Virus record (IMG/VR): IMGVR_UViG_3300034072_000926
Span: 186,001 to 250,000 of that record
Length of the DNA stretch: 64,000 bases
Strand: one strand, 5' to 3'
Under the pieces are notes generated by a model. The model was given only the letters and a program-made list of their open reading frames with translations, was not told where the DNA came from and did no database searches. A program made the position numbers and the translations under genes. Position 1 is the first letter of the stretch. Each line of letters begins with the position of its first letter. Shown here piece after piece: positions 31,421-60,629 of the stretch.

Positions 31421-31879
31421 TCACTCCACTGCGCTGAAACGCTTGGTGATCGCATGTGCCTGTTCGCGGGTGCAAGGGCCAATACCCAGGGCAGTCACGA
31501 TGGGCGAACCATCGAACTCGGTGCCGGGGATAATGTGGTTCTTGTCCACGATGAGGGAAGTGATCAGACCAGCAGCCTGGGCCTCTTCGTAAGCGCGCTG
31601 GATAGCGGCTTCGTTCTTGGCCTTGAGGATGACTTGGGTGCCGATGAAGTCCGGGCCCTGGTAAACACGCAGGAGTTCCGGTTCGCGCCGACTAGCGAGA
31701 AGCACACAATTCTTGGCCGCATGACAAGCCTGGCTTGCCAGCTTACCGGGCTTCATAGCCAGGTCGCCTCGAATGATGCTATAGATGCGAAGCTTTTCAG
31801 AGGCAGCTTCGAAGGCCTCGTCGTCATTATCCGCTTCGTAGCGAGCAATGGCTTCCTACAAGAACGAGTTCGTCAGCAT
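31421..31879 (-). CDS. pth2: Peptidyl-tRNA hydrolase type 2 (Pth2) with in-frame amber codon at codon 8 (31856-31858)
   Basis: 'IIRGDLAMKPGKLASQACHAA...VILKA...LIVD...TALGIGP' is Pth2. The ORF-track start (31756) truncates the conserved first strand. The in-frame ATG at 31879 follows the RBS AGAAAGGA and reads MLTNSFL*EAIARYE. Confidence 0.8.
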
Positions 31880-31919
31880 TTGCAGTCCTTTCTATTTGCG
31901 TCCAACATCGGACGTCCTC

Positions 31920-31947
31920 AACATAAGACACTTTTAGGATGTGTCAA
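31920..31947 (-). promoter_or_regulatory. Sigma70-like promoter of pth2
   Basis: TTGACA-N16-TATGTT. Confidence 0.55.
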
Positions 31948-31961
31948 CACTTAAATTGAAA

Positions 31962-32300
31962 TTATTTTGCCTCGGTTTCTTTCAAGGCTTCAATCTCTTC
32001 CCTGGTGTAATATTTCGTCGTATCAGGGCTAGTACAACCATGTGGACTATGGTATTTCATTTTCCACATCAATGCACCTTTCTCAGTTGGAAAGATAACC
32101 TCCAATGCAGGACCTTCCCAACGTCCGCCCCAAGCCTCAATATCAGCAAGGACTTCTGGCTTTAGATCAGGTGTAAACTTATCAGCCCAGTGACCTATAA
32201 TCAAACCTTCTTTCCAGAGGTTGATCGTGCCATACCCGAAATGATGTTCCGTTGGTTCATCATCGTTTATGCCATTCCAGGTATAATAGGTCATCGCCAC
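31962..32300 (-). CDS. Small 'FKL-tail' family protein (divergent)
   Basis: FPTEKGALMWKMKY. Confidence 0.55.
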   Translation of the reverse strand: MAMTYYTWNGINDDEPTEHHFGYGTINLWKEGLIIGHWADKFTPDLKPEVLADIEAWGGRWEGPALEVIFPTEKGALMWKMKYHSPHGCTSPDTTKYYTREEIEALKETEAK

Positions 32301-32623
32301 CTCAGCTTAAACATCATCGCATCGCGCGAATGGCTAAACACCACACCGACACTATACGAGCAACCTGTCTCCCAGCCAACTTTCTTCCACTCGCCATGCT
32401 TGACATTTTCCTTACACCATTCCTCAACAGGAATGAATGTGGACCAGGAAAAGCCTAGCATCTTGACCAGATACCAGTTCGGGAACTTCTTATGGATTGA
32501 TTCGACGAAATCTCCGTCTTCCCATTCGTCTTCTTCGAATAGGTTTGAGGTCTCCACGTCTTCGGAAATTTGGCCATCGTGGTAACCGAGATCGTCCCAC
32601 AGCCAGGTAACATCATTATTCAT
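32291..32623 (-). CDS. Small 'FKL-tail' family protein
   Basis: VEEWCKEN...FSHSRDAMMFKLRWR; GGAGGA RBS. Confidence 0.65.
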   Translation of the reverse strand: MNNDVTWLWDDLGYHDGQISEDVETSNLFEEDEWEDGDFVESIHKKFPNWYLVKMLGFSWSTFIPVEEWCKENVKHGEWKKVGWETGCSYSVGVVFSHSRDAMMFKLRWR

Positions 32624-32705
32624 TATATCCTCCAGTCAGTAATGTTGTTGAAACATTCTGTGGAGGAGGGCCTCGTTGGACCTAGTGATGCTTATTCGTG
32701 TTCAT
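32616..32705 (-). promoter_or_regulatory. Leader ORF MNTNKHH*(TAG)VQRGPPPQ... with anti-SD hairpin; putative amber-responsive translational attenuator
   Basis: ATG lies 7 nt after the -10 box, with TAG at codon 8. The read-through frame ends at TAA overlapping the ATG at 32623. TCCTCCA pairs with the SD TGGAGGA. Confidence 0.55.
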
Positions 32706-32712
32706 GTAACTA

Positions 32713-32741
32713 CTTATAAGACACTAGGTCCGCAGAGTCAA
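32713..32741 (-). promoter_or_regulatory. Sigma70-like promoter (leaderless leader-ORF transcript)
   Basis: TTGACT-N17-TATAAG. Confidence 0.6.
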
Positions 32742-32743
32742 AA

Positions 32744-33187
32744 TTAAATCAGTTCCTGATCGGCCGCAGCATTCAGAATACCGCGATAGACCCGCATGTT
32801 GGGACGATACGGTCCACTGGCGCTGAAATAGCGCATATCGTCCCCGTTGAAGATCTTGTCCAACGCAGCAGCGACCGCAGCACTCCTGCACTGTCCCATG
32901 AGACAATGAACGTATAAGACGCTCACATCCTTCTCTACCATTTCGTGATAGAAATCCAGGACTTGCTTGGCATGATCATCATCGAACAGGATACGGGTTT
33001 CCTCTTCGGGTTCCCCGTTCTTATACTGATCAATGTCGTGGAACTGTAGGTTCAGCCTACCCATGAGGTATTCATTCTCATGGATAGTGGGAAACTCGCC
33101 CTTCTCACAGATGCTGACTACTGCCCAAGGCTTCTCGGGCGGATTGGCAACTTCCATGATGGCTCGGCTATATACTACAAACTTCAT
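32744..33187 (-). CDS. Protein-tyrosine/dual-specificity phosphatase-like protein
   Basis: Cx5R motif HCLMGQCRSAAVA, plus 'FHDID' and 'PNMRV'. Confidence 0.8.
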   Translation of the reverse strand: MKFVVYSRAIMEVANPPEKPWAVVSICEKGEFPTIHENEYLMGRLNLQFHDIDQYKNGEPEEETRILFDDDHAKQVLDFYHEMVEKDVSVLYVHCLMGQCRSAAVAAALDKIFNGDDMRYFSASGPYRPNMRVYRGILNAAADQELI

Positions 33188-33537
33188 GCACCAGTTTTAT
33201 TCTGTTCTGGAGCACCTGTCAACTTCTTAAAAGCTTCGACTTCCCTGTCGAGAATTTCGAGAGCAATAGGAATATCTGCGCCTGCAACTCGAATGTCGAA
33301 AAAGCCCCAATGACATTCATCGTCGCCGTCCGAATCGTAGCACTGATATTCAGTGCCGGTCTTCTCGTCGAGGAAATGGTTATCCAGAGAATACCAGAGA
33401 TCTTCATCAATAGCACCGACTGGAATTTTGATGCGACATGTGAGCTCGATGATAGGTTTCTCGGCATCATGCACGAAAATCCAATCGGTCGGGACAACCA
33501 GCTTAGAATCCCGAACCAAGATCGCAAAGATGCTCAT
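33184..33537 (-). CDS. Hypothetical acidic protein
   Basis: ORF with ATGA overlaps on both sides. Confidence 0.55.
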   Translation of the reverse strand: MSIFAILVRDSKLVVPTDWIFVHDAEKPIIELTCRIKIPVGAIDEDLWYSLDNHFLDEKTGTEYQCYDSDGDDECHWGFFDIRVAGADIPIALEILDREVEAFKKLTGAPEQNKTGA

Positions 33538-34334
33538 TCGTCACTGCCATTTGCGTGACGAGTGACATGCAGAGCGTTATCGGCCTGATACTTCTCGACC
33601 TGCTGCCAATTGTAGATGCAGCGATCCAGACCGATGGCAATCTCGAGCACAAGTGCGTCCTTCTCAACAAGACCTTTCTTGCTCTGGAACTTCAGCTTCT
33701 CAGGGAAATCAGTTCGCAGGCTGATGCTGCAAACTTCCATCCACTTGTCACCGTTCCAGACTTCAACGTCCATCGTCTTCAGCGAATAGGCCGGCAGACG
33801 ATCCGACTCAACAAGACGGGTCGGTAAATGAACCATAGAGGCGATCATCTTCCGAACGGGTTCGAGGATCGCAGCATGATAGTCGTTCGCTGTGTCTGCA
33901 CTGTAGATGCACTGGAACTCTTGCTGGTAGAACTCCTTAAGGCGCATGTGCTTGGTCGGCTGCACGATTTCCCGACGGAAGCTCTTACCCGCCTGCCAAA
34001 CCACAAAGGGCGGGGAAACGCCAAGATGGTTGTTGAGCAGGTATTGCGCGTAGGCATAGCTACCGGGAGTGGTTTCGGGTCGCAGCGTCAACGGCGCTTC
34101 GCCGGACATGGCCGGGACCTGCTGATCCCATACATCCTCAGATGTGTAGTTGACATTGAGTAGATCACGCGGAGTGAGTAACGGGGCCTCGACGAAATGG
34201 AACTTCCACTGCGGGTTCAAGGCCAGCAATGCGTTTTGAATGGTCCGAGCAAAATAGTCCCGGAAGGTTTCGCGAAGGCGGATCTCTTCCTCATTCCAGA
34301 AGACCAGACCATTGATGTTATAGGGATTCTGCAT
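33534..34334 (-). CDS. Class II aminoacyl-tRNA synthetase catalytic domain, GlyRS (alpha2-type)-like, lacking an anticodon-binding domain
   Basis: LRPETT, QAGKSFRRE (motif 2), RLKEFYQQEFQ, PAYS..TMDVE, WMEVCSISLRTDF, VLEIAIGLDR (motif 3). The protein ends about 25 aa after motif 3. Likely start MQNPYN at 34334. Confidence 0.75.
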   Translation of the reverse strand: MQNPYNINGLVFWNEEEIRLRETFRDYFARTIQNALLALNPQWKFHFVEAPLLTPRDLLNVNYTSEDVWDQQVPAMSGEAPLTLRPETTPGSYAYAQYLLNNHLGVSPPFVVWQAGKSFRREIVQPTKHMRLKEFYQQEFQCIYSADTANDYHAAILEPVRKMIASMVHLPTRLVESDRLPAYSLKTMDVEVWNGDKWMEVCSISLRTDFPEKLKFQSKKGLVEKDALVLEIAIGLDRCIYNWQQVEKYQADNALHVTRHANGSDE

Positions 34335-34342
34335 AATGGGCC

Positions 34343-34852
34343 TTACTGGTTGAGAATGAAGATGAAGGAAACAACTGCCATCATAACACCGCCCCAGAAG
34401 AATGGGCTCTTCAGCAGCGCGGGCTTGATATCTGGGATAGCGATGGGTTCTGGTTCCGGCCTCGGTTCCCGAACATTTCTGAGCCCGAGGAAGGCTTGCC
34501 ATTCCCATTCCGAAGAAGGCCGGTCATTGTTGTTCGTACTAGCCGCACCAGCATAGCCGATATACAGGCCTTCGCTGGCCGCCCATGTCCTCAGCTCTTC
34601 CCATACGGGCTGATATGCAGATTTCTCATCTTCCATATCCCATCGAGAACCATAGCAGGGCATTTCGAAGAGATGCCGGATAGCCTTTGGGGCAGTCACT
34701 GGCGCATATTCACTGCCGTGCTTTACTGCCTCTTGTAGGGCTTCGAGCAAGGTGGACTTTACGAAGAACCGAAGGAGGTCTGCATTCTCCTTCAGTTCAT
34801 TATGGATGGCTTCGCGCTTGGTCTTGCGAAGATCATCTGCGAGCGTTGCCAT
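34343..34852 (-). CDS. Hypothetical protein with C-terminal transmembrane anchor
   Basis: Hydrophobic C-terminal 'PFFWGGVMMAVVSFIFIL'. Confidence 0.6.
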   Translation of the reverse strand: MATLADDLRKTKREAIHNELKENADLLRFFVKSTLLEALQEAVKHGSEYAPVTAPKAIRHLFEMPCYGSRWDMEDEKSAYQPVWEELRTWAASEGLYIGYAGAASTNNNDRPSSEWEWQAFLGLRNVREPRPEPEPIAIPDIKPALLKSPFFWGGVMMAVVSFIFILNQ

Positions 34853-36171
34853 TAGTCTTCAATCCTCAAGTGATCTGCCTTGTATTCAGCTTCGAAGACA
34901 TCCTTATAGGTTTTGATGATTAGAATCAATACCGCAGGATACAGGAAGGTGGACAGAAGGACATTGCCGACCACAATAGCCTCGAAGAGTTCCAGGTATT
35001 CAAAGTCCCTGGGAATCATATGCAACATGAGCAGCGAGAACGCACCCTTCACACCGGCAGCAGTCAATACCTTCCACCAATGCAGCGGGATGGTCACAAC
35101 TTTATCAGTCCGCTGACTCATCCAAGCAAACCCGCCCAACATGACCATTCGAATGATCGTCGAACCTACGAATACTGCCATGATCTCGCCCCAATACTTC
35201 ACAAGCAACTGGAGATTGATCAGATTAGCCATCGTAATGAACAAGACCGTCGAGGCAATGATTGCAATGAACTGGATGTTACCGATGACGACTTGATAGG
35301 CATAGGAATCCTTGATCATGTTGTCGAAACGAGGAATGATCTTCCCAATGGTCCGACCACGTTCGCCAGTGTCCTCAACAGCATTCTCGAGTTCACTCGA
35401 TAGTCGCTTGGTGATGATATTGTTGGCGAAGAGGATCGCAACGATAACAGCAAAGATGCCAGAAGCATGATAGTGTTCAGCAATCGCGAACGCGCCTAGG
35501 GCCATGAGCAGGACAATCATCGTCTCAGTCATTGCATCGTGGATATAACGCAGAGCAATAAGACCCACGTAACCAACGACCAGACCAATGCCAAGTGCGC
35601 CGACGACCATCTTGACCGCGTAGAGGGTGGGGTTATCCGCTACATGCTCGGGGCCATGACCCATATAGACTAGCGCGATACTGAATACAATCAGGGCACT
35701 TGCGTCGTTGAACAAACTCTCACCCTCTGCGAGGACTTTGAGATTGTGAGGCAAATGCGACCGACCGAACACCGCAGAGACCGAAACTGGATCCGTTGCA
35801 AGGATCATACAGAACAATGCTGCGACCGCCGGGGCCGTCAGATGGTAGTCAGGTAGAATGTGTCGATTGACCATGATTGCAAGGCCGACCGAAAGGACGA
35901 TCATAATGCCTGCAATGTAGAACAAGCTTAGGGCATTGCGCTTGAGCTCATCCCAGCGGAGCATCATAGCGTCAACGCATATCAGGATGGGAAGCATGAG
36001 GAAGACCAGATGGTCAAATGTTTGATCACTAATCTCGATGGGACGATGCCCGGAAAGTGAAACCAGAACCACCGAGGCGATAATTGTTATCGGGGTGGGA
36101 ACGCCTAGCTTTTGCTGGACGAAAAGAGCCGTAGCGGCTATGAGCACAACAAAGATAGCTAGTTCTAGCAT
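34852..36171 (-). CDS. CPA1-family Na+(K+)/H+ antiporter (NhaP-like)
   Basis: Many hydrophobic helices; ATDPVSV and EGESLFNDA motifs. Confidence 0.9.
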   Translation of the reverse strand: MLELAIFVVLIAATALFVQQKLGVPTPITIIASVVLVSLSGHRPIEISDQTFDHLVFLMLPILICVDAMMLRWDELKRNALSLFYIAGIMIVLSVGLAIMVNRHILPDYHLTAPAVAALFCMILATDPVSVSAVFGRSHLPHNLKVLAEGESLFNDASALIVFSIALVYMGHGPEHVADNPTLYAVKMVVGALGIGLVVGYVGLIALRYIHDAMTETMIVLLMALGAFAIAEHYHASGIFAVIVAILFANNIITKRLSSELENAVEDTGERGRTIGKIIPRFDNMIKDSYAYQVVIGNIQFIAIIASTVLFITMANLINLQLLVKYWGEIMAVFVGSTIIRMVMLGGFAWMSQRTDKVVTIPLHWWKVLTAAGVKGAFSLLMLHMIPRDFEYLELFEAIVVGNVLLSTFLYPAVLILIIKTYKDVFEAEYKADHLRIED

Positions 36172-36209
36172 CTACTTTCCTATTCTGTTTGACCTCATAA
36201 AATGTTGAG

Positions 36210-36282
36210 CGCGCCTAGCGAGGCTCGAACTCGCGACCCGCGGATTTAGAGTCCGCTGCTCTACCAACTGAGCTATAAGCGC
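36210..36282 (-). tRNA. Amber-suppressor tRNA (anticodon CUA), tRNA-Gly-like body, no encoded CCA
   Basis: Minus strand GCGCTTA-TA-GCTC-AGTTGGTA-GAGC-A-GCGGA-CTCTAAA-TCCGC-GGGTC-GCGAG-TTCGAGC-CTCGC-TAGGCGC-G gives a complete cloverleaf with a 7-nt loop CT-CTA-AA. Confidence 0.92.
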
Positions 36283-36293
36283 ATGTAACCTTT

Positions 36294-36752
36294 TTAGGAC
36301 TTATTCTCCAGCCTGTCAAGACGTTCCATGATTTCTCGGAGAAGTTCTACCTGCTCCCTGGATTGATTCTTGAGAAGTTCCTGTTCCTCGTGCGTGAATG
36401 CATCGCTGTTGACGATCAGATGTGCGGCAAACTTAGCCGTGATGATCGGTGCGATGATAAAGGTGCAAACGTGCATGAACACGCCTGCAAGAAACTTGCT
36501 CCAGGGATGCGTGGGAAACATATCCCCGTATCCAACAGTGGTCGCTGTCACGGTCGCCCACCAAAAGCTGTCAGTGATGTCCTTGCCTTCGATGAAGCTG
36601 AACATAAGAGCAGCTATGGTCATGATCAGGCCATATGCAATTGCAAGGCTTATGACCCGATTGAACAGTTTCTGCATCAGCGTCAATTCTTGACCAGCCC
36701 CGGCTGCGGCGGTCCACAAATCACTACCGGCTTGTTCGATCTTTCTACGCAT
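36294..36752 (-). CDS. Two-TM potassium channel (KcsA-like)
   Basis: Selectivity filter TATTVGYGD flanked by two TM helices. Confidence 0.9.
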   Translation of the reverse strand: MRRKIEQAGSDLWTAAAGAGQELTLMQKLFNRVISLAIAYGLIMTIAALMFSFIEGKDITDSFWWATVTATTVGYGDMFPTHPWSKFLAGVFMHVCTFIIAPIITAKFAAHLIVNSDAFTHEEQELLKNQSREQVELLREIMERLDRLENKS

Positions 36753-37408: not shown

Positions 37409-38758
37409 TTAGAGTTTCCTCCATTCGGTGCCGTGAACGCCATCGGCAAGCGCGATTCCTGCATCAGTAAGCTGCTGACGAATCTGATCCGCTCTCTCGT
37501 AATCTCGATTCGCACGAGCAGCTTGACGTGCCGCTATTAGCGACTCTACCCACACCTTGTCAACACCAAAGGTGCGCCACTGGTGAGGAGTTTGGTTAAA
37601 GAAACCAAGGAACTGAGCACATTTGATCAGTTGAGCCTTAGATTTTGCCTTTTCATTTCCACTTTCCAACGCATCAGCGAGTTCGTGGAGAATGGCAATA
37701 GCTTTGGTGGTATTCAGATCATGCTGGAGAGCATTCAGGAAATTCTCCGGCAGATCACAATCTTCGGCATAATTGACATCATCGTGCCGGTAGATCGTCT
37801 CATATAGACGATCCAACGACTTATAGGCCACATCCAGTTTCGACAATGTGAAGTCCATCGGACTACGATAATGTGACTGGAGGAAGAGATAACGAACTGC
37901 CTCGCCGGGATATTGCTCGACCAGCTCATTGAGGTAGATTACATTGCCCCGACTCTTCGACATCTTTTCGCTGTCGACGGTCAAAAGACCATTATGGATC
38001 CAGTTATTGGCCAGTGGCTTACCAATGGCGCAATGACTCTGAGCACATTCGGCTTCATGATGTGGAAAGCGAAGATCCTGTCCGCCGCCATGAATGTCGA
38101 TGGTCTGTTCATTAAACTCAGCAGCAATCATAGCTGAGCATTCAATATGCCAACCCGGTCGACCTTGACCCCAAGGACTATTCCACCAAGGCTCGCCCTC
38201 TTTTGCGGGCTTCCAGAGAATGAAGTCCCTTGGATCCTTTTTCTTTGGATCAACTTCGACTCGCGAACCACTTTCAAGGCTCTTGTGATTAGCAAGTCCA
38301 GGATGCGGGTTACTGGGAACATGGAAGAATACCTCACCCTTGCGGACATACGCATACTTCTGTTCAACGAGACGCTTAATTAGCGTCAGCATCCCTCTAA
38401 TGTTCTCTGTGGCTTTAGGCTCTACCGTTGGAGCCAAGCAATTGAGGGCAGCAAGGTCAGCGTGATATGCCTCGAGAGCCGGCTCGGTTATGGCCGAGAT
38501 ATCGACACCTTGCTCAATCGAAGCGTTGATGATCTTGTCATCAATATCCGTGACATTACGAGCATATCTGACTGCATTTTCACCATATGTATAGCGGAGC
38601 AATCGGAAGAGCTGGTCGAATACGATAGCGGGGCGAGCATTGCCAATGTGGGCCGGGCCATAAACGGTTGGTCCACAGACATACATGCTCACGTGATTTG
38701 GATCGAGCGGTGTGAACTCTCGCAGAGAACGCGACTGACTATCATAGAGTTTAATCAT
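37409..38758 (-). CDS. cysS: Cysteine--tRNA ligase
   Basis: CGPTVY, HIGN, GRPGWHIECSAM, DIHGGGQDLRFPHH, KMSKS. Confidence 0.95.
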   Translation of the reverse strand: MIKLYDSQSRSLREFTPLDPNHVSMYVCGPTVYGPAHIGNARPAIVFDQLFRLLRYTYGENAVRYARNVTDIDDKIINASIEQGVDISAITEPALEAYHADLAALNCLAPTVEPKATENIRGMLTLIKRLVEQKYAYVRKGEVFFHVPSNPHPGLANHKSLESGSRVEVDPKKKDPRDFILWKPAKEGEPWWNSPWGQGRPGWHIECSAMIAAEFNEQTIDIHGGGQDLRFPHHEAECAQSHCAIGKPLANNWIHNGLLTVDSEKMSKSRGNVIYLNELVEQYPGEAVRYLFLQSHYRSPMDFTLSKLDVAYKSLDRLYETIYRHDDVNYAEDCDLPENFLNALQHDLNTTKAIAILHELADALESGNEKAKSKAQLIKCAQFLGFFNQTPHQWRTFGVDKVWVESLIAARQAARANRDYERADQIRQQLTDAGIALADGVHGTEWRKL

Positions 38759-43559: not shown

Positions 43560-43715
43560 AATCCTATGTTATGGTTTCTGCACTACAGATGTCTATAATG
43601 TCTTACAACTTTTACAGCTTTGAAACGCTCAACGAGCACGACAAGCAACCCTTGCGATCATGTGGTCTAGCAGGGCAATATCGACGGTTAGCGGGCTTGA
43701 TAGCGCAGTCATGAG

Positions 43716-43744
43716 AACAAGAGGGAAGTTGCCTCCCCTCTTGT
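43716..43744 (-). terminator. Intrinsic terminator after the vWA gene
   Basis: ACAAGAGGGGAG-GCAA-CTTCCCTCTTGT-TCTC on the minus strand. Confidence 0.65.
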
Positions 43745-43764
43745 CCTTGTGTTGGTCGAAGCTG

Positions 43765-45054
43765 TTACGCGGCGCGCTTGGCCTCGTCCTTCACATAATA
43801 TGCGGTCATGCCGAAGGGAGCAACGATGTTGGTGTTGCCGTGGACCACGAACAGCGTGTCGCAGTAGTCCTCTTCGCCCCACGTGCCGCAGGGATAACCG
43901 TCCGTGAACATGACGAACTTCTTGGGTTCGATTGCATCGCCCAGACCCTCGACATCGCCGAAGCCATAGCCGGCCGGATCGCGCATGAACTCCCAGTTGC
44001 ACTCAAACATGGTGCCACCGCCACCCTTGGGATCATAGCTCATGATCTCGTCCAGGTTGTTTGCCGTGAAGACCGCCGGGTTATAGACGCGAGTGTCGAA
44101 CGTCCACAGGGTCAGCTTGAACTCGTCGAACGTCTCCATGATGCCCTTAGTTTCCGAAAGGAAGTCGCGGAGCATTTCGTCGGTCATCGAACCCGAGGTG
44201 TCGATGCAGACTGCAACGTCGACGGTGTCCTTGAAGTTGCTGCCGGGCAGGATGACCGTTGCGCCACCGTCCACGCCCCACGAGCGCTTGCTCGGACGGT
44301 TGAAGGTGTAGTCGTCCTTGATCGAGGACTGGATGTGCATTTCCAGAAGGGTGCGCCAGTCCATGATGGGGTTGGTGAAGTCCTCGATGAGACGCTTGAC
44401 GCCCGCAGGGACCTTGCCGGCGCCCACGGCCTGAGCAGCATTGATCGTCGCAGCCTTGATTTCGTTGCGGATCTTTTGCTTGTCCTCTTCGGTCAGCTGG
44501 GGAGGACCATCGGGGCCGCCCTGGACAGTAACCGTAACGGTCTTGCCGCCGCTGTTGCCATCTTCGTCGCCTTCGCCGTCGCTGCCGTCCATTTCCAGAT
44601 GCTCGTCCAGGGTCATCTGGAACTTGGTCTGGTTCTGTTCGAGCAGGCGATACACCTCTTCCGACGTCATTTCGTCGGTGTATTTGTCGTCATACAGGCC
44701 GCCCTGGGGCATCTTGCCCAGCTTTTCCTTGACGAGGGTGTAATTGACGATATAGTCGTTCGCCATGTTCCACAGTTTGTGTTCACGCGAGCCCTTGCGA
44801 CCAAGGTGGTCGTAAACGCAGTGAAGCACTTCGTGGCCAATGAGGAACAGCAGTTCGTCGGGCGTCAGCGCCTTGATGAATTCGCGGTTGTAATAGAGCT
44901 TGCGGCCGTCGGTTGCAGCGGTCTTGCACCACTTGGTTGCATCGACGAGCTCCATGCGCGTAGCGAGGTTACCGAAGAACGGCTGGTTGAAGAGAAGACC
45001 CACACGCGCCTGCACAATGGCCTGGACGACGGGATCTGACATATTTGCTGCCAT
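43765..45054 (-). CDS. HExxH metallopeptidase-like + vWA domain protein (DUF2201-type)
   Basis: TAATDG, HEVLH, MIDAS DTSGS, GGGT, FTDG. Confidence 0.85.
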   Translation of the reverse strand: MAANMSDPVVQAIVQARVGLLFNQPFFGNLATRMELVDATKWCKTAATDGRKLYYNREFIKALTPDELLFLIGHEVLHCVYDHLGRKGSREHKLWNMANDYIVNYTLVKEKLGKMPQGGLYDDKYTDEMTSEEVYRLLEQNQTKFQMTLDEHLEMDGSDGEGDEDGNSGGKTVTVTVQGGPDGPPQLTEEDKQKIRNEIKAATINAAQAVGAGKVPAGVKRLIEDFTNPIMDWRTLLEMHIQSSIKDDYTFNRPSKRSWGVDGGATVILPGSNFKDTVDVAVCIDTSGSMTDEMLRDFLSETKGIMETFDEFKLTLWTFDTRVYNPAVFTANNLDEIMSYDPKGGGGTMFECNWEFMRDPAGYGFGDVEGLGDAIEPKKFVMFTDGYPCGTWGEEDYCDTLFVVHGNTNIVAPFGMTAYYVKDEAKRAA

Positions 45055-45079
45055 GGAAACCTTCCTTTCTTGTCTGCCC

Positions 45080-45107
45080 ATTATAACATGAGCAAACTCT
45101 TTGTCAA
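45080..45107 (-). promoter_or_regulatory. Consensus sigma70 promoter
   Basis: TTGACA-N16-TATAAT. Confidence 0.75.
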
Positions 45108-45119
45108 CCTATTTGGCAT

Positions 45120-45153
45120 AAAAACGGGGTGGAATGTTGCCACTCCACCCCGT
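45120..45153 (-). terminator. Intrinsic terminator after the AAA gene
   Basis: ACGGGGTGGAG...TTCCACCCCGT-TTT on the minus strand. Confidence 0.7.
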
Positions 45154-45180
45154 CCCGTTAGGCCACGGGAACCGTTTGGA

Positions 45181-46383
45181 TCAAGCGCCCAGGATCAGGT
45201 CCTGATACTTGTCCGAGAAGTCGTCCCAGTTCTTCATGCCCGAAGGATCGAACTGGATCTTGAAGATCGCCAGTGCGGTGCGCGCACCCATGATCACCAT
45301 TTCGGACTGGAAGTTGCCCATCATGAAGCCGAGGAAGTTATCCACGTTCGTGTTGAACTTCTTCTTGTCTTCGGCCTTGGCGCCCTTGCCGGCGTTGGTG
45401 TCGAAGCGGTCCTTCAGCTCGTAGCACAGAGCGGTCGTCAGTGCATACATCAGCGAGATGTCAGCGCCCTTCTTCAGCTCAGTGACCTTGCCTTCCAGAA
45501 TGTCGCTGGCGGCGGGCAGGTTTGCCGCGTTCTTGCGGTATTCCAGGAACTTGACCGCGATACCGTCGCCGACGGCGCCGGCGATCAGTGCCATCTGGAC
45601 GCTTTCCGGCAGATTCGGATCACCGCGCAGGATATCCGAAACGCTTTCCCACGAACGAGGGGTCGGGAAGCCACGCGATGCGCTCGTCGCTTCGAACTGG
45701 AACAGTTCGTGCTTGAAGGCAGTCAGGTAGCCGACCACGGCCTGGTGGAACTGGGTGTTCAGCGCGAAGGTCTGGAAGTCTTCGAAGTCGACCCGCATTT
45801 CGATGTGCGTGAAGCGATTCAGCAGCGGGGTCGGCATCTTGAACGTGGCGCCCTTGTCGGTGTCACGGTTGCCGGCGGCCATCACGATCACGTTGGTCGG
45901 GCAGACCCATTCGCCGAGCGCGCCGTCCAGAACGATCTGGTAAGAACCAGCCTGGACCGAAGGAGCAGCGTTGGGAAGTTCGTCGAGCAGGATGATCGCA
46001 CCATCATAATTGTGGCCGAAATCGTCGGTGATGACTGCGCGACCCTTTTCGTCGCCGGCGGTGCGCTTGGGCAGCATTGCCGGGATCGCCCATTCCACAT
46101 ATGCACGACCTTCGTCGTTCTTGAAGGGAACCGGGATGCCGCGAAGGTCAGTGGGTTCCATCTGCGTCAGTCGAATGTCGATGAGCTTGTAGTTCAGCTC
46201 GTCGGCGACCTGTTCGACGACCGAGGACTTTGCGATGCCGGGAGCGCCCCAGATGAACAGACCACGGCGCTTCTTGCCGATTTCTGCGTTCTTGAGGTTC
46301 ACTTCCACCATGTGCTTGATTGCAATGGCAGCTTCCGACGGCTTCACCGTCAGCGTGTCGATACGATTTGCCTTCTTGGACAT
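45181..46383 (-). CDS. MoxR-like AAA+ ATPase
   Basis: Walker A GAPGIAKS, Walker B ILLDE, AAGN, NRF, TPRSW. Confidence 0.9.
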   Translation of the reverse strand: MSKKANRIDTLTVKPSEAAIAIKHMVEVNLKNAEIGKKRRGLFIWGAPGIAKSSVVEQVADELNYKLIDIRLTQMEPTDLRGIPVPFKNDEGRAYVEWAIPAMLPKRTAGDEKGRAVITDDFGHNYDGAIILLDELPNAAPSVQAGSYQIVLDGALGEWVCPTNVIVMAAGNRDTDKGATFKMPTPLLNRFTHIEMRVDFEDFQTFALNTQFHQAVVGYLTAFKHELFQFEATSASRGFPTPRSWESVSDILRGDPNLPESVQMALIAGAVGDGIAVKFLEYRKNAANLPAASDILEGKVTELKKGADISLMYALTTALCYELKDRFDTNAGKGAKAEDKKKFNTNVDNFLGFMMGNFQSEMVIMGARTALAIFKIQFDPSGMKNWDDFSDKYQDLILGA

Positions 46384-46429
46384 TTGAACTCCTTATAGTG
46401 GCCTAACGGTTACTAACAACCTATCTGCA

Positions 46430-57310: not shown

Positions 57311-57338
57311 TATCTGTCTCTCCTTATAGTTGTTCTAT

Positions 57339-57367
57339 ACCATACTTAGAAACTGGCATAGTGTCAA
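57339..57367 (-). promoter_or_regulatory. Sigma70-like promoter of folE
   Basis: TTGACA-N17-TATGGT. Confidence 0.5.
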
Positions 57368-60396: not shown

Positions 60397-60629
60397 AGCC
60401 AGGTCATCTTGAACAGTATGGCGTGATTATCATCGGGAAAGTTTAGCTCAACGAGACGGTATGATACCACTCGTCCAGAGAACAGAATGCCTAGGTCGTT
60501 ACACCATTCGGCAACTTCTTCATCTAAGACAGGAAACCAGCTTCCTTCACCTTCTCGATCAATTGTGCATCGAGTCACGAAGCCAGCGTCTTTGTTCTCT
60601 TTGCAATGAGTTTTGACATAGAGCTTCAT
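60393..60629 (-). CDS. Small 'FKL-tail' family protein
   Basis: VAEWCND...FPDDNHAILFKMTWL. Confidence 0.6.
   Translation of the reverse strand: MKLYVKTHCKENKDAGFVTRCTIDREGEGSWFPVLDEEVAEWCNDLGILFSGRVVSYRLVELNFPDDNHAILFKMTWL

What the first reader, a model, noticed from the sequence alone, without database searches (positions are those of the whole stretch)
31421..36282. Candidate self-contained amber read-through circuit: Gly-type tRNA(CUA), anticodon-blind GlyRS, and amber-gated Pth2 and leader
Seen, within 5 kb on one strand: (i) a tRNA with a CUA anticodon whose body looks like tRNA-Gly; (ii) a GlyRS-like class II synthetase that stops right after motif 3, so it has no anticodon-binding domain; (iii) pth2 with an in-frame TAG at codon 8; (iv) a promoter-proximal leader ORF, also with TAG at codon 8, controlling the next gene's SD. 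The other genes in the window, including a 3516-codon ORF, read through in the standard code, so this is not genome-wide recoding. Known: a synthetase that ignores the anticodon can charge a suppressor tRNA (PylRS is the precedent), and Pth recycles peptidyl-tRNA after drop-off. Inference: the phage carries an orthogonal UAG-to-Gly pair used as a translational switch on a few genes, or these genes sense competition between RF1 and the suppressor.
Basis: partly seen in the sequence, partly recalled or inferred. Interest (0 to 1): 0.95.

Follow-up and report, generated by a model that had tools for sequence, protein, structure and literature searches.

The report
Suppressor-tRNA-gated phage pth2 switch
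A huge phage that otherwise uses the standard genetic code carries its own amber-suppressor tRNA and two nearby genes (a peptidyl-tRNA hydrolase and a small leader-controlled operon) that can be translated only if that tRNA reads a deliberately placed early UAG; the arrangement is conserved in dozens of phage lineages and gives a first target for the so far unexplained suppressor tRNAs of jumbo phages.

Summary
All four sequence features exist at the stated coordinates on the minus strand. The window comes from a 465-kb phage related to Sinorhizobium phage Phosso and Agrobacterium phage Atu_ph07.

The in-frame TAG at codon 8 of pth2 is not an error. It is present in all 8 close relatives, with synonymous changes in the 7 codons before it. 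An early in-frame stop after an SD-ATG mini-ORF occurs in 51 of 111 non-redundant phage pth2 loci.

The stop type tracks the suppressor tRNA nearby: TAG with CUA in 25 loci, TGA with UCA in L046, L047 and Atu_ph07, and no mismatched pair.

The leader ORF is conserved too. It is leaderless, has 7-8 codons and then TAG. The read-through part encodes Pro-Pro and forms the anti-SD arm of a hairpin over the next gene's SD.

Late structural genes in the window carry no in-frame TAG, so this is gene-specific gating, not genome recoding.

Not supported: the tRNA is not Gly-like (G73, variable acceptor stem). The truncated GlyRS-like enzyme is real and looks catalytically intact, but it belongs to a large jumbo-phage family that dissociates from the suppressor/pth2 module.

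Verdict: a natural suppressor-tRNA-dependent translational gate. The charging enzyme and the inserted amino acid are unknown.

The parts
36209..36282 (-). Amber-suppressor tRNA (anticodon CUA, discriminator G73, no encoded CCA)
   Evidence: ARAGORN; Rfam RF00005 at 69.9 bits; orthologue covariation
31920..31947 (-). Sigma-70-like promoter of pth2 (TTGACA-16-TATGTT), conserved in relatives
   Evidence: 10 of 12 matches; conserved upstream sequence in 8 loci
31899..31914 (-). Small conserved 5'-UTR hairpin (CGTCC-GATGTT-GGACG) between the promoter and the SD of pth2
   Evidence: read (GTCCGATGTTGGAC conserved); function not tested
31856..31879 (-). pth2 mini-ORF: SD (AAGGA, 31890-31886), ATG, then MLTNSFL, then the in-frame TAG (31858-31856)
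   Evidence: conserved M[LI][TSI]NSFL-TAG with synonymous codon changes in 8 genomes
31421..31855 (-). Body of the Pth2 peptidyl-tRNA hydrolase. It is reached only by reading through the TAG. The first canonical in-frame start lies 34 codons later, inside the domain.
   Evidence: Pfam PF01981 at 7e-20 and NCBIfam Pth2 at 5e-17; 87-91% identity from the first post-TAG residue in relatives
32713..32741 (-). Promoter of the leader (TTGACT-17-TATAAG). The leader ATG lies 7 nt after the -10 box, which implies a leaderless mRNA.
   Evidence: spacing of 6-7 nt conserved in 9 loci
32682..32705 (-). Leader mini-ORF MNTNKHH followed by TAG (32684-32682)
   Evidence: 7-8 codons and then TAG in 9 loci, plus L041, L042, L089 and L090
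32616..32681 (-). Read-through part of the leader (VQRGPPPQ...). It holds the anti-SD CCTCCTCCA (32669-32661), paired with the SD TGGAGGA (32634-32628) of the next gene, and ends at TAA 32618-32616.
   Evidence: fold (z -3.3); covarying anti-SD/SD pairs and synonymous variation including CGG<->AGG in relatives
32291..32623 (-). Gated gene 1: 110-aa protein of unknown function with an acidic N-terminus and a conserved C-terminal domain. It is linked to pth2 in many lineages.
   Evidence: AF2 pLDDT 71 and no fold match
31962..32300 (-). Gene of 112 aa that overlaps the end of gated gene 1 and is probably co-translated. Function unknown.
33534..34334 (-). GlyRS-like class IIa catalytic core without an anticodon-binding domain. 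It is a neighbour of the tRNA; its membership of the circuit is unproven.

Best explanation
The phage's own tRNA(CUA) works as a trans-acting translational key for two nearby cistrons.

(1) pth2 starts with SD-ATG and seven codons, then UAG. Without the suppressor, RF1 releases a heptapeptide. Pth2 is not made, because the fold's first beta-strand lies upstream of the next possible start codon. With charged suppressor tRNA the ribosome reads on and makes full-length Pth2.

(2) A leaderless 7-codon ORF ends in UAG about 15 nt before a hairpin that buries the SD of the next gene. Read-through carries the ribosome through the Pro-Pro-encoding anti-SD arm, which frees the SD. The read-through frame ends at the next gene's start, so that gene and the overlapping one behind it get translated.

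Shown: the parts, their conservation and the co-variation of stop type with anticodon.

Inferred: that read-through happens in vivo and that it gates expression. The placement also looks tuned for suppression, with a very short nascent chain and a purine after the stop. Which amino acid goes in probably does not matter. A host synthetase is the default candidate for charging.

Proposed purpose (speculative): Pth2 output, and that of its partner proteins, is tied to the amount of active suppressor relative to release factor. This would be a feed-forward or AND gate, or an RF2-like sensor of termination efficiency, inside a tRNA-repair/translation island.
For: Conservation of the pth2 TAG:
- TAG at codon 8 of pth2 is present in all 8 close relatives. 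The pre-TAG codons vary mostly synonymously (CTG/CTC/CTT/TTG, ACG/ACC, AAC/AAT, TCG/TCT, TTG/CTG). The post-TAG residues are conserved from residue 1.
- No ATG, GTG or TTG lies between the TAG and the Pfam domain start.
- The cultured phage Phosso has ATG AAG TAT TAG plus a tRNA-CUA.

Co-variation of stop and anticodon:
- Cultured Atu_ph07 has TGA at codon 7. Its single suppressor is UCA, while UGA ends 267 of its genes (PMC6102473).
- In 111 non-redundant loci, 51 are of the read-through type. A CUA tRNA is in the fetched flank of 25 of 45 TAG loci, often 100-600 nt upstream. A UCA tRNA is in the flank of 2 of 3 TGA loci. There are no mismatched pairs.
- A blind scan of 1.2 Mb for early-stop-gated ORFs returns almost only pth2.

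Controls and code:
- The Pth2 genes of XacN1, Xoo-sp13, RsoM2USA and phiM12 have ordinary starts.
- Structural genes in the window carry no TAG. TAG ends only 4 of 72 genes.

Leader:
- It is conserved in 9 loci plus 4 further lineages. The SD-sequestering hairpin forms in all 9 folds, with covarying arms. Synonymous variation follows the TAG, including CGG<->AGG. Atu_ph07 has a TGA version.

tRNA:
- It is under strong structural selection and its anticodon loop is invariant.
Against: There is no expression, ribosome-profiling or proteomic data, so read-through is inferred. About 20 TAG-type loci show no CUA tRNA in the fetched flank; many of these are short contigs. Three TAA-type loci show no UUA tRNA. 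XacN1 and RsoM2USA carry CUA suppressors but have an ungated pth2, so suppressors have other targets too. Leader fold z-scores are weak in 5 of 9 loci. The tRNA, pth2 and leader promoters all look like host-type early promoters, so the gate does not obviously provide late timing. Its physiological purpose is unknown. Only 64 kb of the 465-kb genome was seen, so other TAG-containing genes may exist elsewhere.
Confidence: 0.75

Rival explanations
1. The truncated GlyRS-like enzyme is an anticodon-blind synthetase that charges the neighbouring tRNA(CUA), with glycine, so the phage carries a self-contained orthogonal pair.
For: The tRNA-CUA lies 50-400 nt upstream of the aaRS-like gene on the same strand in L002-L008, Phosso and L093. 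In the window two ion-transport genes are inserted between them. The enzyme's catalytic motifs are invariant in 35-39 homologues, and it folds as a GlyRS-type core. In L042 both the tRNA and the aaRS-like gene are missing from the otherwise syntenic slot. From my own knowledge, Rhizobiales lack GlnRS, the usual charger of amber suppressors. Atu_ph07 uses a Trp-like UCA suppressor and lacks the enzyme, which fits that picture.
Against: The family has at least 1840 members. Members sit next to Ala, Glu, Cys, Tyr, Gly or Ser tRNAs, or next to none. The gene is absent from Atu_ph07. It is absent within 8 kb in more than 20 lineages with a tRNA-CUA/pth2 pair. The tRNA lacks the Gly identity set (U73, C35, C36). 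All 7 of its acceptor pairs vary while the enzyme stays 72-84% identical. An enzyme that reads only G73 would mischarge many host tRNAs.
Confidence: 0.15
2. The phage is partly TAG-recoded (code 15-like) and the pth2 and leader TAGs are just two of many recoded codons. In that case the tRNA serves general decoding of late genes, as proposed for Lak and crAss-like phages.
For: Suppressor tRNAs and TAG depletion are hallmarks of recoded phages and their relatives (bioRxiv 10.1101/2021.08.26.457843). TAG is a rare stop here, 4 of 72. Only 14% of the genome was inspected. Some gene callers in public data already translated these TAGs as Q.
Against: Baseplate, tail-fibre and lysis-type genes, including the 3516-aa and 1070-aa ORFs, have no in-frame TAG. 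The stop always sits at codons 3-14 of pth2 and never in its body. A blind scan of 1.2 Mb of related sequence finds essentially only pth2. Atu_ph07 ends 267 genes with the very codon its suppressor reads.
Confidence: 0.06
3. No read-through occurs. The mini-ORFs are ordinary upstream ORFs. Pth2 is either made by re-initiation at a non-canonical codon after the stop or is a truncated, inactive remnant that starts at Met34.
For: In many lineages the codon after the stop is ATT, ATC, GTG, GTT or CTG, and these could act as weak starts. Public annotations start the gene at the internal Met.
Against: The mini-ORF is in frame with pth2 in all 51 read-through-type loci, which re-initiation would not require. 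In the window clade the codon after TAG is GAA. The sequence between the stop and Met34 is conserved as protein and contains beta-strand 1 of the fold. The stop type follows the suppressor anticodon.
Confidence: 0.04

Closest known systems
Stop-codon recoding in phages as a regulator of late or lytic genes (Lak, crAss-like and 'Jade' phages with suppressor tRNA, aaRS and RF 'code-change modules'; Borges et al., bioRxiv 10.1101/2021.08.26.457843)
   Same: A phage-encoded suppressor tRNA lets genes with in-frame stops be translated in a standard-code host. The idea that this acts as a post-transcriptional switch is shared.
   Different: There, hundreds of in-frame stops are spread through structural and lysis genes. 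Here the genome reads in the standard code. The stop is a single codon placed at positions 3-14 of one gene family (pth2) and in one leader peptide, next to the tRNA. The target is a translation-quality-control enzyme, not lysis.
prfB (RF2) autoregulation: in-frame UGA at codon 26 bypassed by +1 frameshifting
   Same: An early in-frame stop codon in the gene for a translation-termination or recycling factor makes expression depend on how slowly that stop is recognised.
   Different: prfB needs no special tRNA and senses its own product. Here by-pass needs a dedicated phage tRNA, and whether Pth2 feeds back is unknown. A second class of phage pth2 genes found here does use a prfB-like +1 arrangement.
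bldA tRNA-Leu(UAA) of Streptomyces: a regulon gated by one tRNA that reads a rare codon
   Same: A single dedicated tRNA controls translation of a small set of genes through a codon that is otherwise avoided.
   Different: bldA reads a sense codon and acts in cellular development. Here a nonsense codon is read in competition with a release factor, in a virus.
Leader-peptide control of a sequestered SD (erm/cat-type translational attenuation, EF-P-dependent polyproline pauses)
   Same: A short leader ORF is followed by a hairpin that hides the next gene's SD. A ribosome positioned on the 5' arm frees the SD. Pro-Pro codons sit in the arm.
   Different: The trigger is not a drug or an amino-acid shortage. 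It is read-through of a UAG inside the leader by a phage tRNA. The leader mRNA appears to be leaderless.
Unexplained suppressor tRNAs of cultured jumbo phages (Atu_ph07 UCA; XacN1 and RsoM2USA CUA)
   Same: Same kind of phage and same kind of tRNA. Atu_ph07 and Phosso are relatives of the window's phage.
   Different: The authors looked for C-terminal extensions and found no targets (PMC5852040). The targets found here are N-terminal mini-ORF gates that annotation pipelines cut away.

Membership tests
Bacterial tRNA-Gly (substrate of GlyRS) | Discriminator U73 | tested here: not met
   G73 in the window tRNA and invariant in 11 orthologues
Bacterial tRNA-Gly (substrate of GlyRS) | Anticodon bases C35 and C36 | tested here: not met
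   The anticodon is C34 U35 A36
Bacterial tRNA-Gly (substrate of GlyRS) | Conserved G1-C72, C2-G71, G3-C70 | tested here: not met
   Present in the window and L002 only. All 7 acceptor pairs change on both sides among orthologues.
Bacterial tRNA-Gly (substrate of GlyRS) | Overall body closest to Gly tRNAs | tested here: inconclusive
   The nearest tRNAs among 200 from related loci are Arg(UCU), Asn and Thr at 0.72-0.80 identity. Gly appears only 5th for the window and 1st for Phosso. No isotype-specific models were available.
Nonsense (amber) suppressor tRNA | Canonical cloverleaf with a 7-nt loop, U33, anticodon CUA and purine 37 | tested here: met
Nonsense (amber) suppressor tRNA | Is aminoacylated and inserts an amino acid at UAG in vivo | not testable with these tools
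   Only indirect support: conserved in-frame TAG targets that covary with the anticodon
Glycyl-tRNA synthetase (alpha2 type) | Class IIa catalytic core with motifs 1, 2 (FRxE) and 3 (GxDR) | tested here: met
Glycyl-tRNA synthetase (alpha2 type) | C-terminal HGTP anticodon-binding domain | tested here: not met
   The protein ends about 25 residues after motif 3. The NCBIfam match stops at profile position 346 of 454. All homologues are 245-300 aa.
Glycyl-tRNA synthetase (alpha2 type) | Scores above the curated equivalog cut-off | tested here: not met
   60.6 bits against a cut-off of 312
Glycyl-tRNA synthetase (alpha2 type) | Activates glycine and charges tRNA | not testable with these tools
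Residues that align with the GlyRS RPET and FxQxE motifs are invariant.
Pth2 peptidyl-tRNA hydrolase (PF01981) | Full-length PTH2 domain above the gathering score | tested here: met
   71.8 bits against 23, profile positions 3-113 of 115. It falls below the NCBIfam equivalog cut-offs: 62 against 126.
Code-15 (TAG-recoded) phage | Many in-frame TAGs in long genes, and coding density that rises when TAG is read as sense | tested here: not met
   Within the 64-kb window only pth2 and the leader qualify. The rest of the genome was not seen.
Translational attenuator with a sequestered SD | Leader ORF plus a conserved hairpin pairing the SD with an upstream anti-SD | tested here: met
   All 9 loci fold this way, with different, complementary arm sequences

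The most novel reading that the evidence does not exclude
Phage pth2 may be the hub of a general 'private tRNA key' system. In different lineages the gene is unlocked by a dedicated tRNA encoded just upstream. That tRNA is an amber, an opal or possibly an ochre suppressor. In a second large class it is a tRNA whose anticodon, sometimes in a widened loop, matches the +1-frame codon at a stop-terminated mini-ORF. That would be natural quadruplet or +1-frameshift decoding, helped by a conserved downstream RNA element. In GlnRS-less hosts the GlyRS-like core could be the dedicated charger of the amber key.
Probability: 0.35. Interest if true: 0.95.

Novelty: new variant of a known kind. Interest (0 to 1): 0.85.

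Why it matters
Suppressor tRNAs in standard-code jumbo phages have been reported repeatedly, and their targets were explicitly left unidentified (XacN1, Atu_ph07, RsoM2USA papers). This work names concrete, conserved targets and explains why they were missed: annotation trims the N-terminal mini-ORF.

It shows a natural, gene-specific nonsense-suppression switch, something built many times in synthetic biology but not known from nature in this form. It links that switch to peptidyl-tRNA recycling.

It is directly testable in cultured systems (Phosso on S. meliloti, Atu_ph07). It may also supply compact natural orthogonal tRNA/codon parts.

It corrects the annotation of a whole protein family, since most database entries are 110-111-aa truncations.

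Tried and rejected
- Megablast of the 5-kb region against GenBank phages gave no hit. Protein-level searches were needed.
- I tried to infer the inserted amino acid from 'uninterrupted' Pth2 homologues. The Q at the stop position in P0135 and P0146 is an artefact of code-15 translation in the database; the DNA has TAG.
- I tried to assign the tRNA isotype by similarity to 200 tRNAs from related loci. The result was ambiguous: Arg(UCU), Asn, Thr, Gly.
- PHROGs, Pfam, AF2 and Foldseek on the gated 110-aa protein and its small neighbours gave no function.
- The 10-bp inverted repeat GGACCTAGTG/CACTAGGTCC around the leader TAG could have been an alternative reason for that TAG. It is present only in the window and L002, not in the other relatives, so it does not explain the conserved TAG.
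- Other ATG...TAG mini-ORFs in intergenic regions of the window (36172-36198, 60491-60523, 57335-57343) could not be evaluated because no conserved relatives were available.
- Two loose matches in the window (63544, 63198) to the downstream motif of the frameshift class lie inside coding sequence and are chance hits.
- CysRS next door was considered as the charging enzyme. It is a complete canonical CysRS, and the tRNA lacks U73 and GCA.

Full report
**What is there**

All features lie on the minus strand. ARAGORN finds one tRNA in the window, at 36209-36282, with anticodon CUA. Rfam scores it at 69.9 bits.

Downstream on the same strand come the following genes:
- a Na+/H+ exchanger gene and a 169-aa gene;
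- a 266-aa class II synthetase-like gene (33534-34334);
- a 117-aa gene;
- a DSP-like phosphatase gene (32744-33187);
- a 121-nt gap holding the 'leader';
- genes of 110 and 112 aa;
- pth2;
- two further small genes.

The window is part of IMGVR_UViG_3300034072_000926, a 465-kb phage contig. The nearest cultured relatives are Sinorhizobium phage Phosso (469 kb) and Agrobacterium phage Atu_ph07 (490 kb).

The neighbourhood is a translation and tRNA-repair island. It holds a complete CysRS (37409-38758), an RnlA-type RNA ligase, a kinase/phosphoesterase (Pnkp-like) and an ATP-grasp protein.

The plus-strand block 181-22586 holds baseplate, tail-fibre and cell-wall-hydrolase genes, including the 3516-aa ORF. 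None has an in-frame TAG. Among 72 curated genes the stops are TAA 43, TGA 25 and TAG 4.

**pth2**

The gene reads SD(AAGGA)-ATG(31879)-CTG ACG AAC TCG TTC TTG-TAG(31858-31856)-GAA GCC... The Pfam PTH2 domain (7e-20) begins at residue 24 after the TAG. That is ten residues before the only in-frame canonical start, at 31756. A product started at that Met would lack the first strand of the fold.

In the seven closest relatives (72-84% identical in the synthetase-like protein) the same arrangement is found: M[LI][TSI]NSFL-TAG-EA... Codon changes before the TAG are mostly synonymous. The post-TAG sequence is 87-91% identical from its first residue. This rules out an assembly error or a private mutation. 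It also shows that both sides of the TAG are under protein-level selection in one frame.

**Breadth**

I fetched pth2 loci from IMG/VR (47), from metagenomes (80) and from cultured phages. A blind classification of the 111 non-redundant loci gives these classes:
- 51 with an SD-ATG mini-ORF of 2-13 codons ending in an in-frame stop, after which Pth2 continues (TAG 45, TGA 3, TAA 3);
- 25 of a different, +1-frame type (described below);
- 11 with ordinary starts;
- 24 unclear. Nine of these are TAG plus tRNA-CUA cases, and several have two in-frame TAGs.

A CUA tRNA lies in the fetched flank of 25 of the 45 TAG loci, often 100-600 nt upstream of pth2. A UCA tRNA lies in the flank of two of the three TGA loci. 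The third TGA locus is Atu_ph07, whose published tRNA set has exactly one suppressor, UCA. Meanwhile UGA ends 267 of that phage's genes (PMC6102473). No locus pairs TAG with UCA or TGA with CUA.

Phosso has ATG AAG TAT TAG GTT and a tRNA-CUA 4.6 kb upstream. The stop is followed by a purine in about 36 of 40 lineages. From my own knowledge of E. coli context effects, a purine there favours suppression.

The Pth2 genes of XacN1, Xoo-sp13, RsoM2USA and phiM12 start normally. An unbiased scan of all fetched sequence (1.2 Mb) for early-stop-gated ORFs returns almost only pth2: 32 TAG hits, against 5 for TAA and 3 for TGA. About 27 of the TAG hits are pth2.

**The leader**

The layout is TTGACT-17-TATAAG, seven nucleotides, then ATG(32705), six more codons and TAG(32684-32682). 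There is no SD, and the 6-7-nt distance from the -10 box is conserved in nine loci. This implies a leaderless mRNA.

After the TAG the frame continues for 12-24 codons. These always include Pro-Pro (GPPP, APRAPPL, SRSPP). The frame stops between 35 nt before and 7 nt after the ATG of the next gene; in Phosso the overlap is ATGA. The post-TAG codons differ among relatives mainly at third positions and by CGG<->AGG. That is what translation predicts, not what RNA structure alone predicts.

The Pro-Pro codons form the 5' arm of a hairpin whose 3' arm is the SD region of the next gene. The arm sequences differ between lineages but stay complementary: CCTCCTCCA/TGGAGGA, CCACTCAC/GTGAGTG, CGTTCTCC/GGAGAACG. 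All nine fold this way. The z-scores are about -3.3 to -3.5 for the window, L003 and Phosso, and weaker for the others.

The same leader is seen in L041, L042, L089 and L090. Atu_ph07 has ATG AAG TGA ATC GTT TTT AAA CCT CCA TAG, with CCTCCATA facing TATGGAGA before the homologous gene. So the opal phage has an opal version.

The controlled 110-aa protein belongs to a 44-member family restricted to these phages and is linked to pth2 in many lineages. Its fold gave no match.

**The tRNA**

Eleven orthologues form the cloverleaf in 99.1% of cells, and 16 of 21 pairs show double changes. The D-stem, the loop CUCUAAA and G73 are invariant, while every acceptor pair varies. This is a functional tRNA, but not a Gly-type one. 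It lacks U73 and C35/C36, and the G1-C72/C2-G71/G3-C70 set is seen only in the window and L002.

Suppressors next to pth2 in other lineages have A73, G73 or U73, and one has a long variable arm. They therefore arose several times and cannot all insert the same residue. This fits a site where only passage matters. Who charges the window's tRNA cannot be told from sequence.

**The GlyRS-like protein**

It is a class IIa core, closest to alpha2 GlyRS by sequence (PDB 8u2q at 1e-9; NCBIfam PRK04173 at 1e-16, but 60 bits against a cut-off of 312). It is also closest by predicted structure (pLDDT 91.8; Foldseek E about 1e-15, ahead of ProRS). Motif 2, motif 3 and the RPET/FxQxE residues are invariant, and no anticodon-binding domain is present.

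It is one of at least 1840 homologues, all 245-300 aa, on huge-phage contigs. In the window clade, Phosso and L093 it follows the tRNA-CUA. Elsewhere it follows Ala, Glu, Cys, Tyr, Gly or Ser tRNAs, or none.

It is absent from Atu_ph07. It is absent within 8 kb in the many lineages where tRNA-CUA abuts pth2. It is present in Caulobacter and Brevundimonas phages that gave no Pth2 hit. On one 543-kb contig the enzyme and the gated pth2 lie 140 kb apart.

It is therefore a tRNA-neighbourhood enzyme of unknown substrate. Its role as the suppressor's synthetase rests on adjacency in one clade only.

**A second recoding class (outside the window, partly followed up)**

In about 25 metagenomic loci the SD-ATG mini-ORF ends in a stop followed by C (CAT TGA CC; xxx TAG CTC/CAC; GTA TAA CGC; CGT TGA CTC), and Pth2 lies in the +1 frame. 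This is like prfB.

Eleven of these loci have a same-strand tRNA within 500 nt upstream. In ten, the anticodon is cognate to the +1-frame codon at the shift site:
- GCU for AGC of UAG-C. These tRNAs are 76-79 nt with no long arm, so they are not Ser tRNAs.
- AAU or GAU for AUU of CAU-UGA. The AAU tRNAs have an A.C mismatch that widens the loop to aCUAAUGAc, and AAUG is complementary to CAUU.
- GUC for GAC of UGA-C.

A conserved element, ACGG-N4-6-GACCGCA plus a covarying hairpin, follows the stop. It is read in different frames in different lineages. It recurs with its mini-ORF on a second gene in L120, L134 and L143.

This suggests that pth2 is gated by a private upstream tRNA in several mechanistically different ways. 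It strengthens the reading of the window's TAG as a gate. These points need proper validation.

**Literature**

Searches of the held library found no description of stop-gated or frameshift-gated phage pth2. The main recoding preprint does not mention peptidyl-tRNA hydrolase. The XacN1 paper states that targets of its CUA suppressors could not be found by reading through annotated stops.

**Verdict**

The 'Gly tRNA plus anticodon-blind GlyRS orthogonal pair' half is not supported. The purpose of tying Pth2 to a suppressor remains inferred: a feed-forward link between suppression and peptidyl-tRNA clean-up, or a sensor of termination efficiency.

Noticed in passing
Metagenome loci L102, L106, L109, L111-L113, L120, L122, L123, L126, L128-L130, L132, L134-L137, L140, L143, L146, L163 (pth2 5' ends): A second class of phage pth2. 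The mini-ORF ends in a stop followed by C, and Pth2 lies in the +1 frame, as in prfB. An unusual tRNA lies just upstream, and its anticodon matches the +1-frame codon in 10 of 11 cases. Some of these tRNAs have a widened anticodon loop, which would suggest natural quadruplet or +1 decoding.
   Followed up: partly
Same loci, 8-12 nt after the stop; also L120:8352, L134:8488, L143:9215: A conserved nucleotide element, ACGG-N4-6-GACCGCA, followed by a covarying hairpin. It is read in different frames in different lineages, so the conservation is at the RNA level. It is reused with its mini-ORF on a second gene. It may be a recoding stimulator.
   Followed up: partly
L149, L153, L155, L159 (pth2 N-terminal extension): Two in-frame TAGs, each in a T-TAG-V context, with a tRNA-CUA 200-600 nt upstream. 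This would be a double gate.
   Followed up: no
L114-L116, L118: pth2 with ATG-TTG-TAA (ochre) in frame at codon 3. No UUA tRNA was found in the fetched flanks.
   Followed up: no
window 36172-36198 (-): A mini-ORF MRSNRIGK-TAG lies between the tRNA and the ATG (36171) of the Na+/H+ exchanger gene, in frame with it. The exchanger gene is unique to this phage, so conservation could not be checked.
   Followed up: no
window 34852-36171 and 36294-36752 (-): The phage encodes a Na+/H+ exchanger (PF00999, 4e-26) and a small K+-channel-like protein (PF07885, 2e-12) flanking the suppressor tRNA. The channel gene is syntenic in five of the seven close relatives (L002, L004, L006-L008).
   Followed up: partly
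window 32723-32732 and 32679-32688 (-): A perfect 10-bp inverted repeat, GGACCTAGTG/CACTAGGTCC, brackets the leader promoter's -10 box and the leader TAG. It is present only in the window and L002. It may be an operator.
   Followed up: partly
window 43660-46398: Long ORFs lie on both strands (459 and 442 aa on plus; 438 and 400 aa on minus). GC3 is 0.78-0.79 for the minus-strand ORFs against 0.58-0.59 for the plus-strand ones, which favours the minus-strand pair.
   Followed up: partly
L046, L047, L053, L061, L063, L064, L066 (and L023): Phage-encoded tmRNA genes lie within a few kb of pth2 and the suppressor tRNA. Ribosome-rescue functions therefore cluster together.
   Followed up: no
L010-L014 (6726-8018) and window 37409-38758: A full-length phage CysRS is linked to the GlyRS-like gene in two separate clades. 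In L010-L014 the two genes are directly adjacent.
   Followed up: no
L048:8525 and L055:6066: Further early-TAG-gated ORFs lie next to pth2. One is an unknown 195-aa protein (MTM-TAG-IDN...). The other is a second, diverged pth2-like gene (MTHISAADT-TAG-...).
   Followed up: partly
Public protein databases (P0121-P0240): Most database entries for this Pth2 subfamily are 110-111-aa truncations that start at the internal Met. Others were translated with TAG read as Q.
   Followed up: yes
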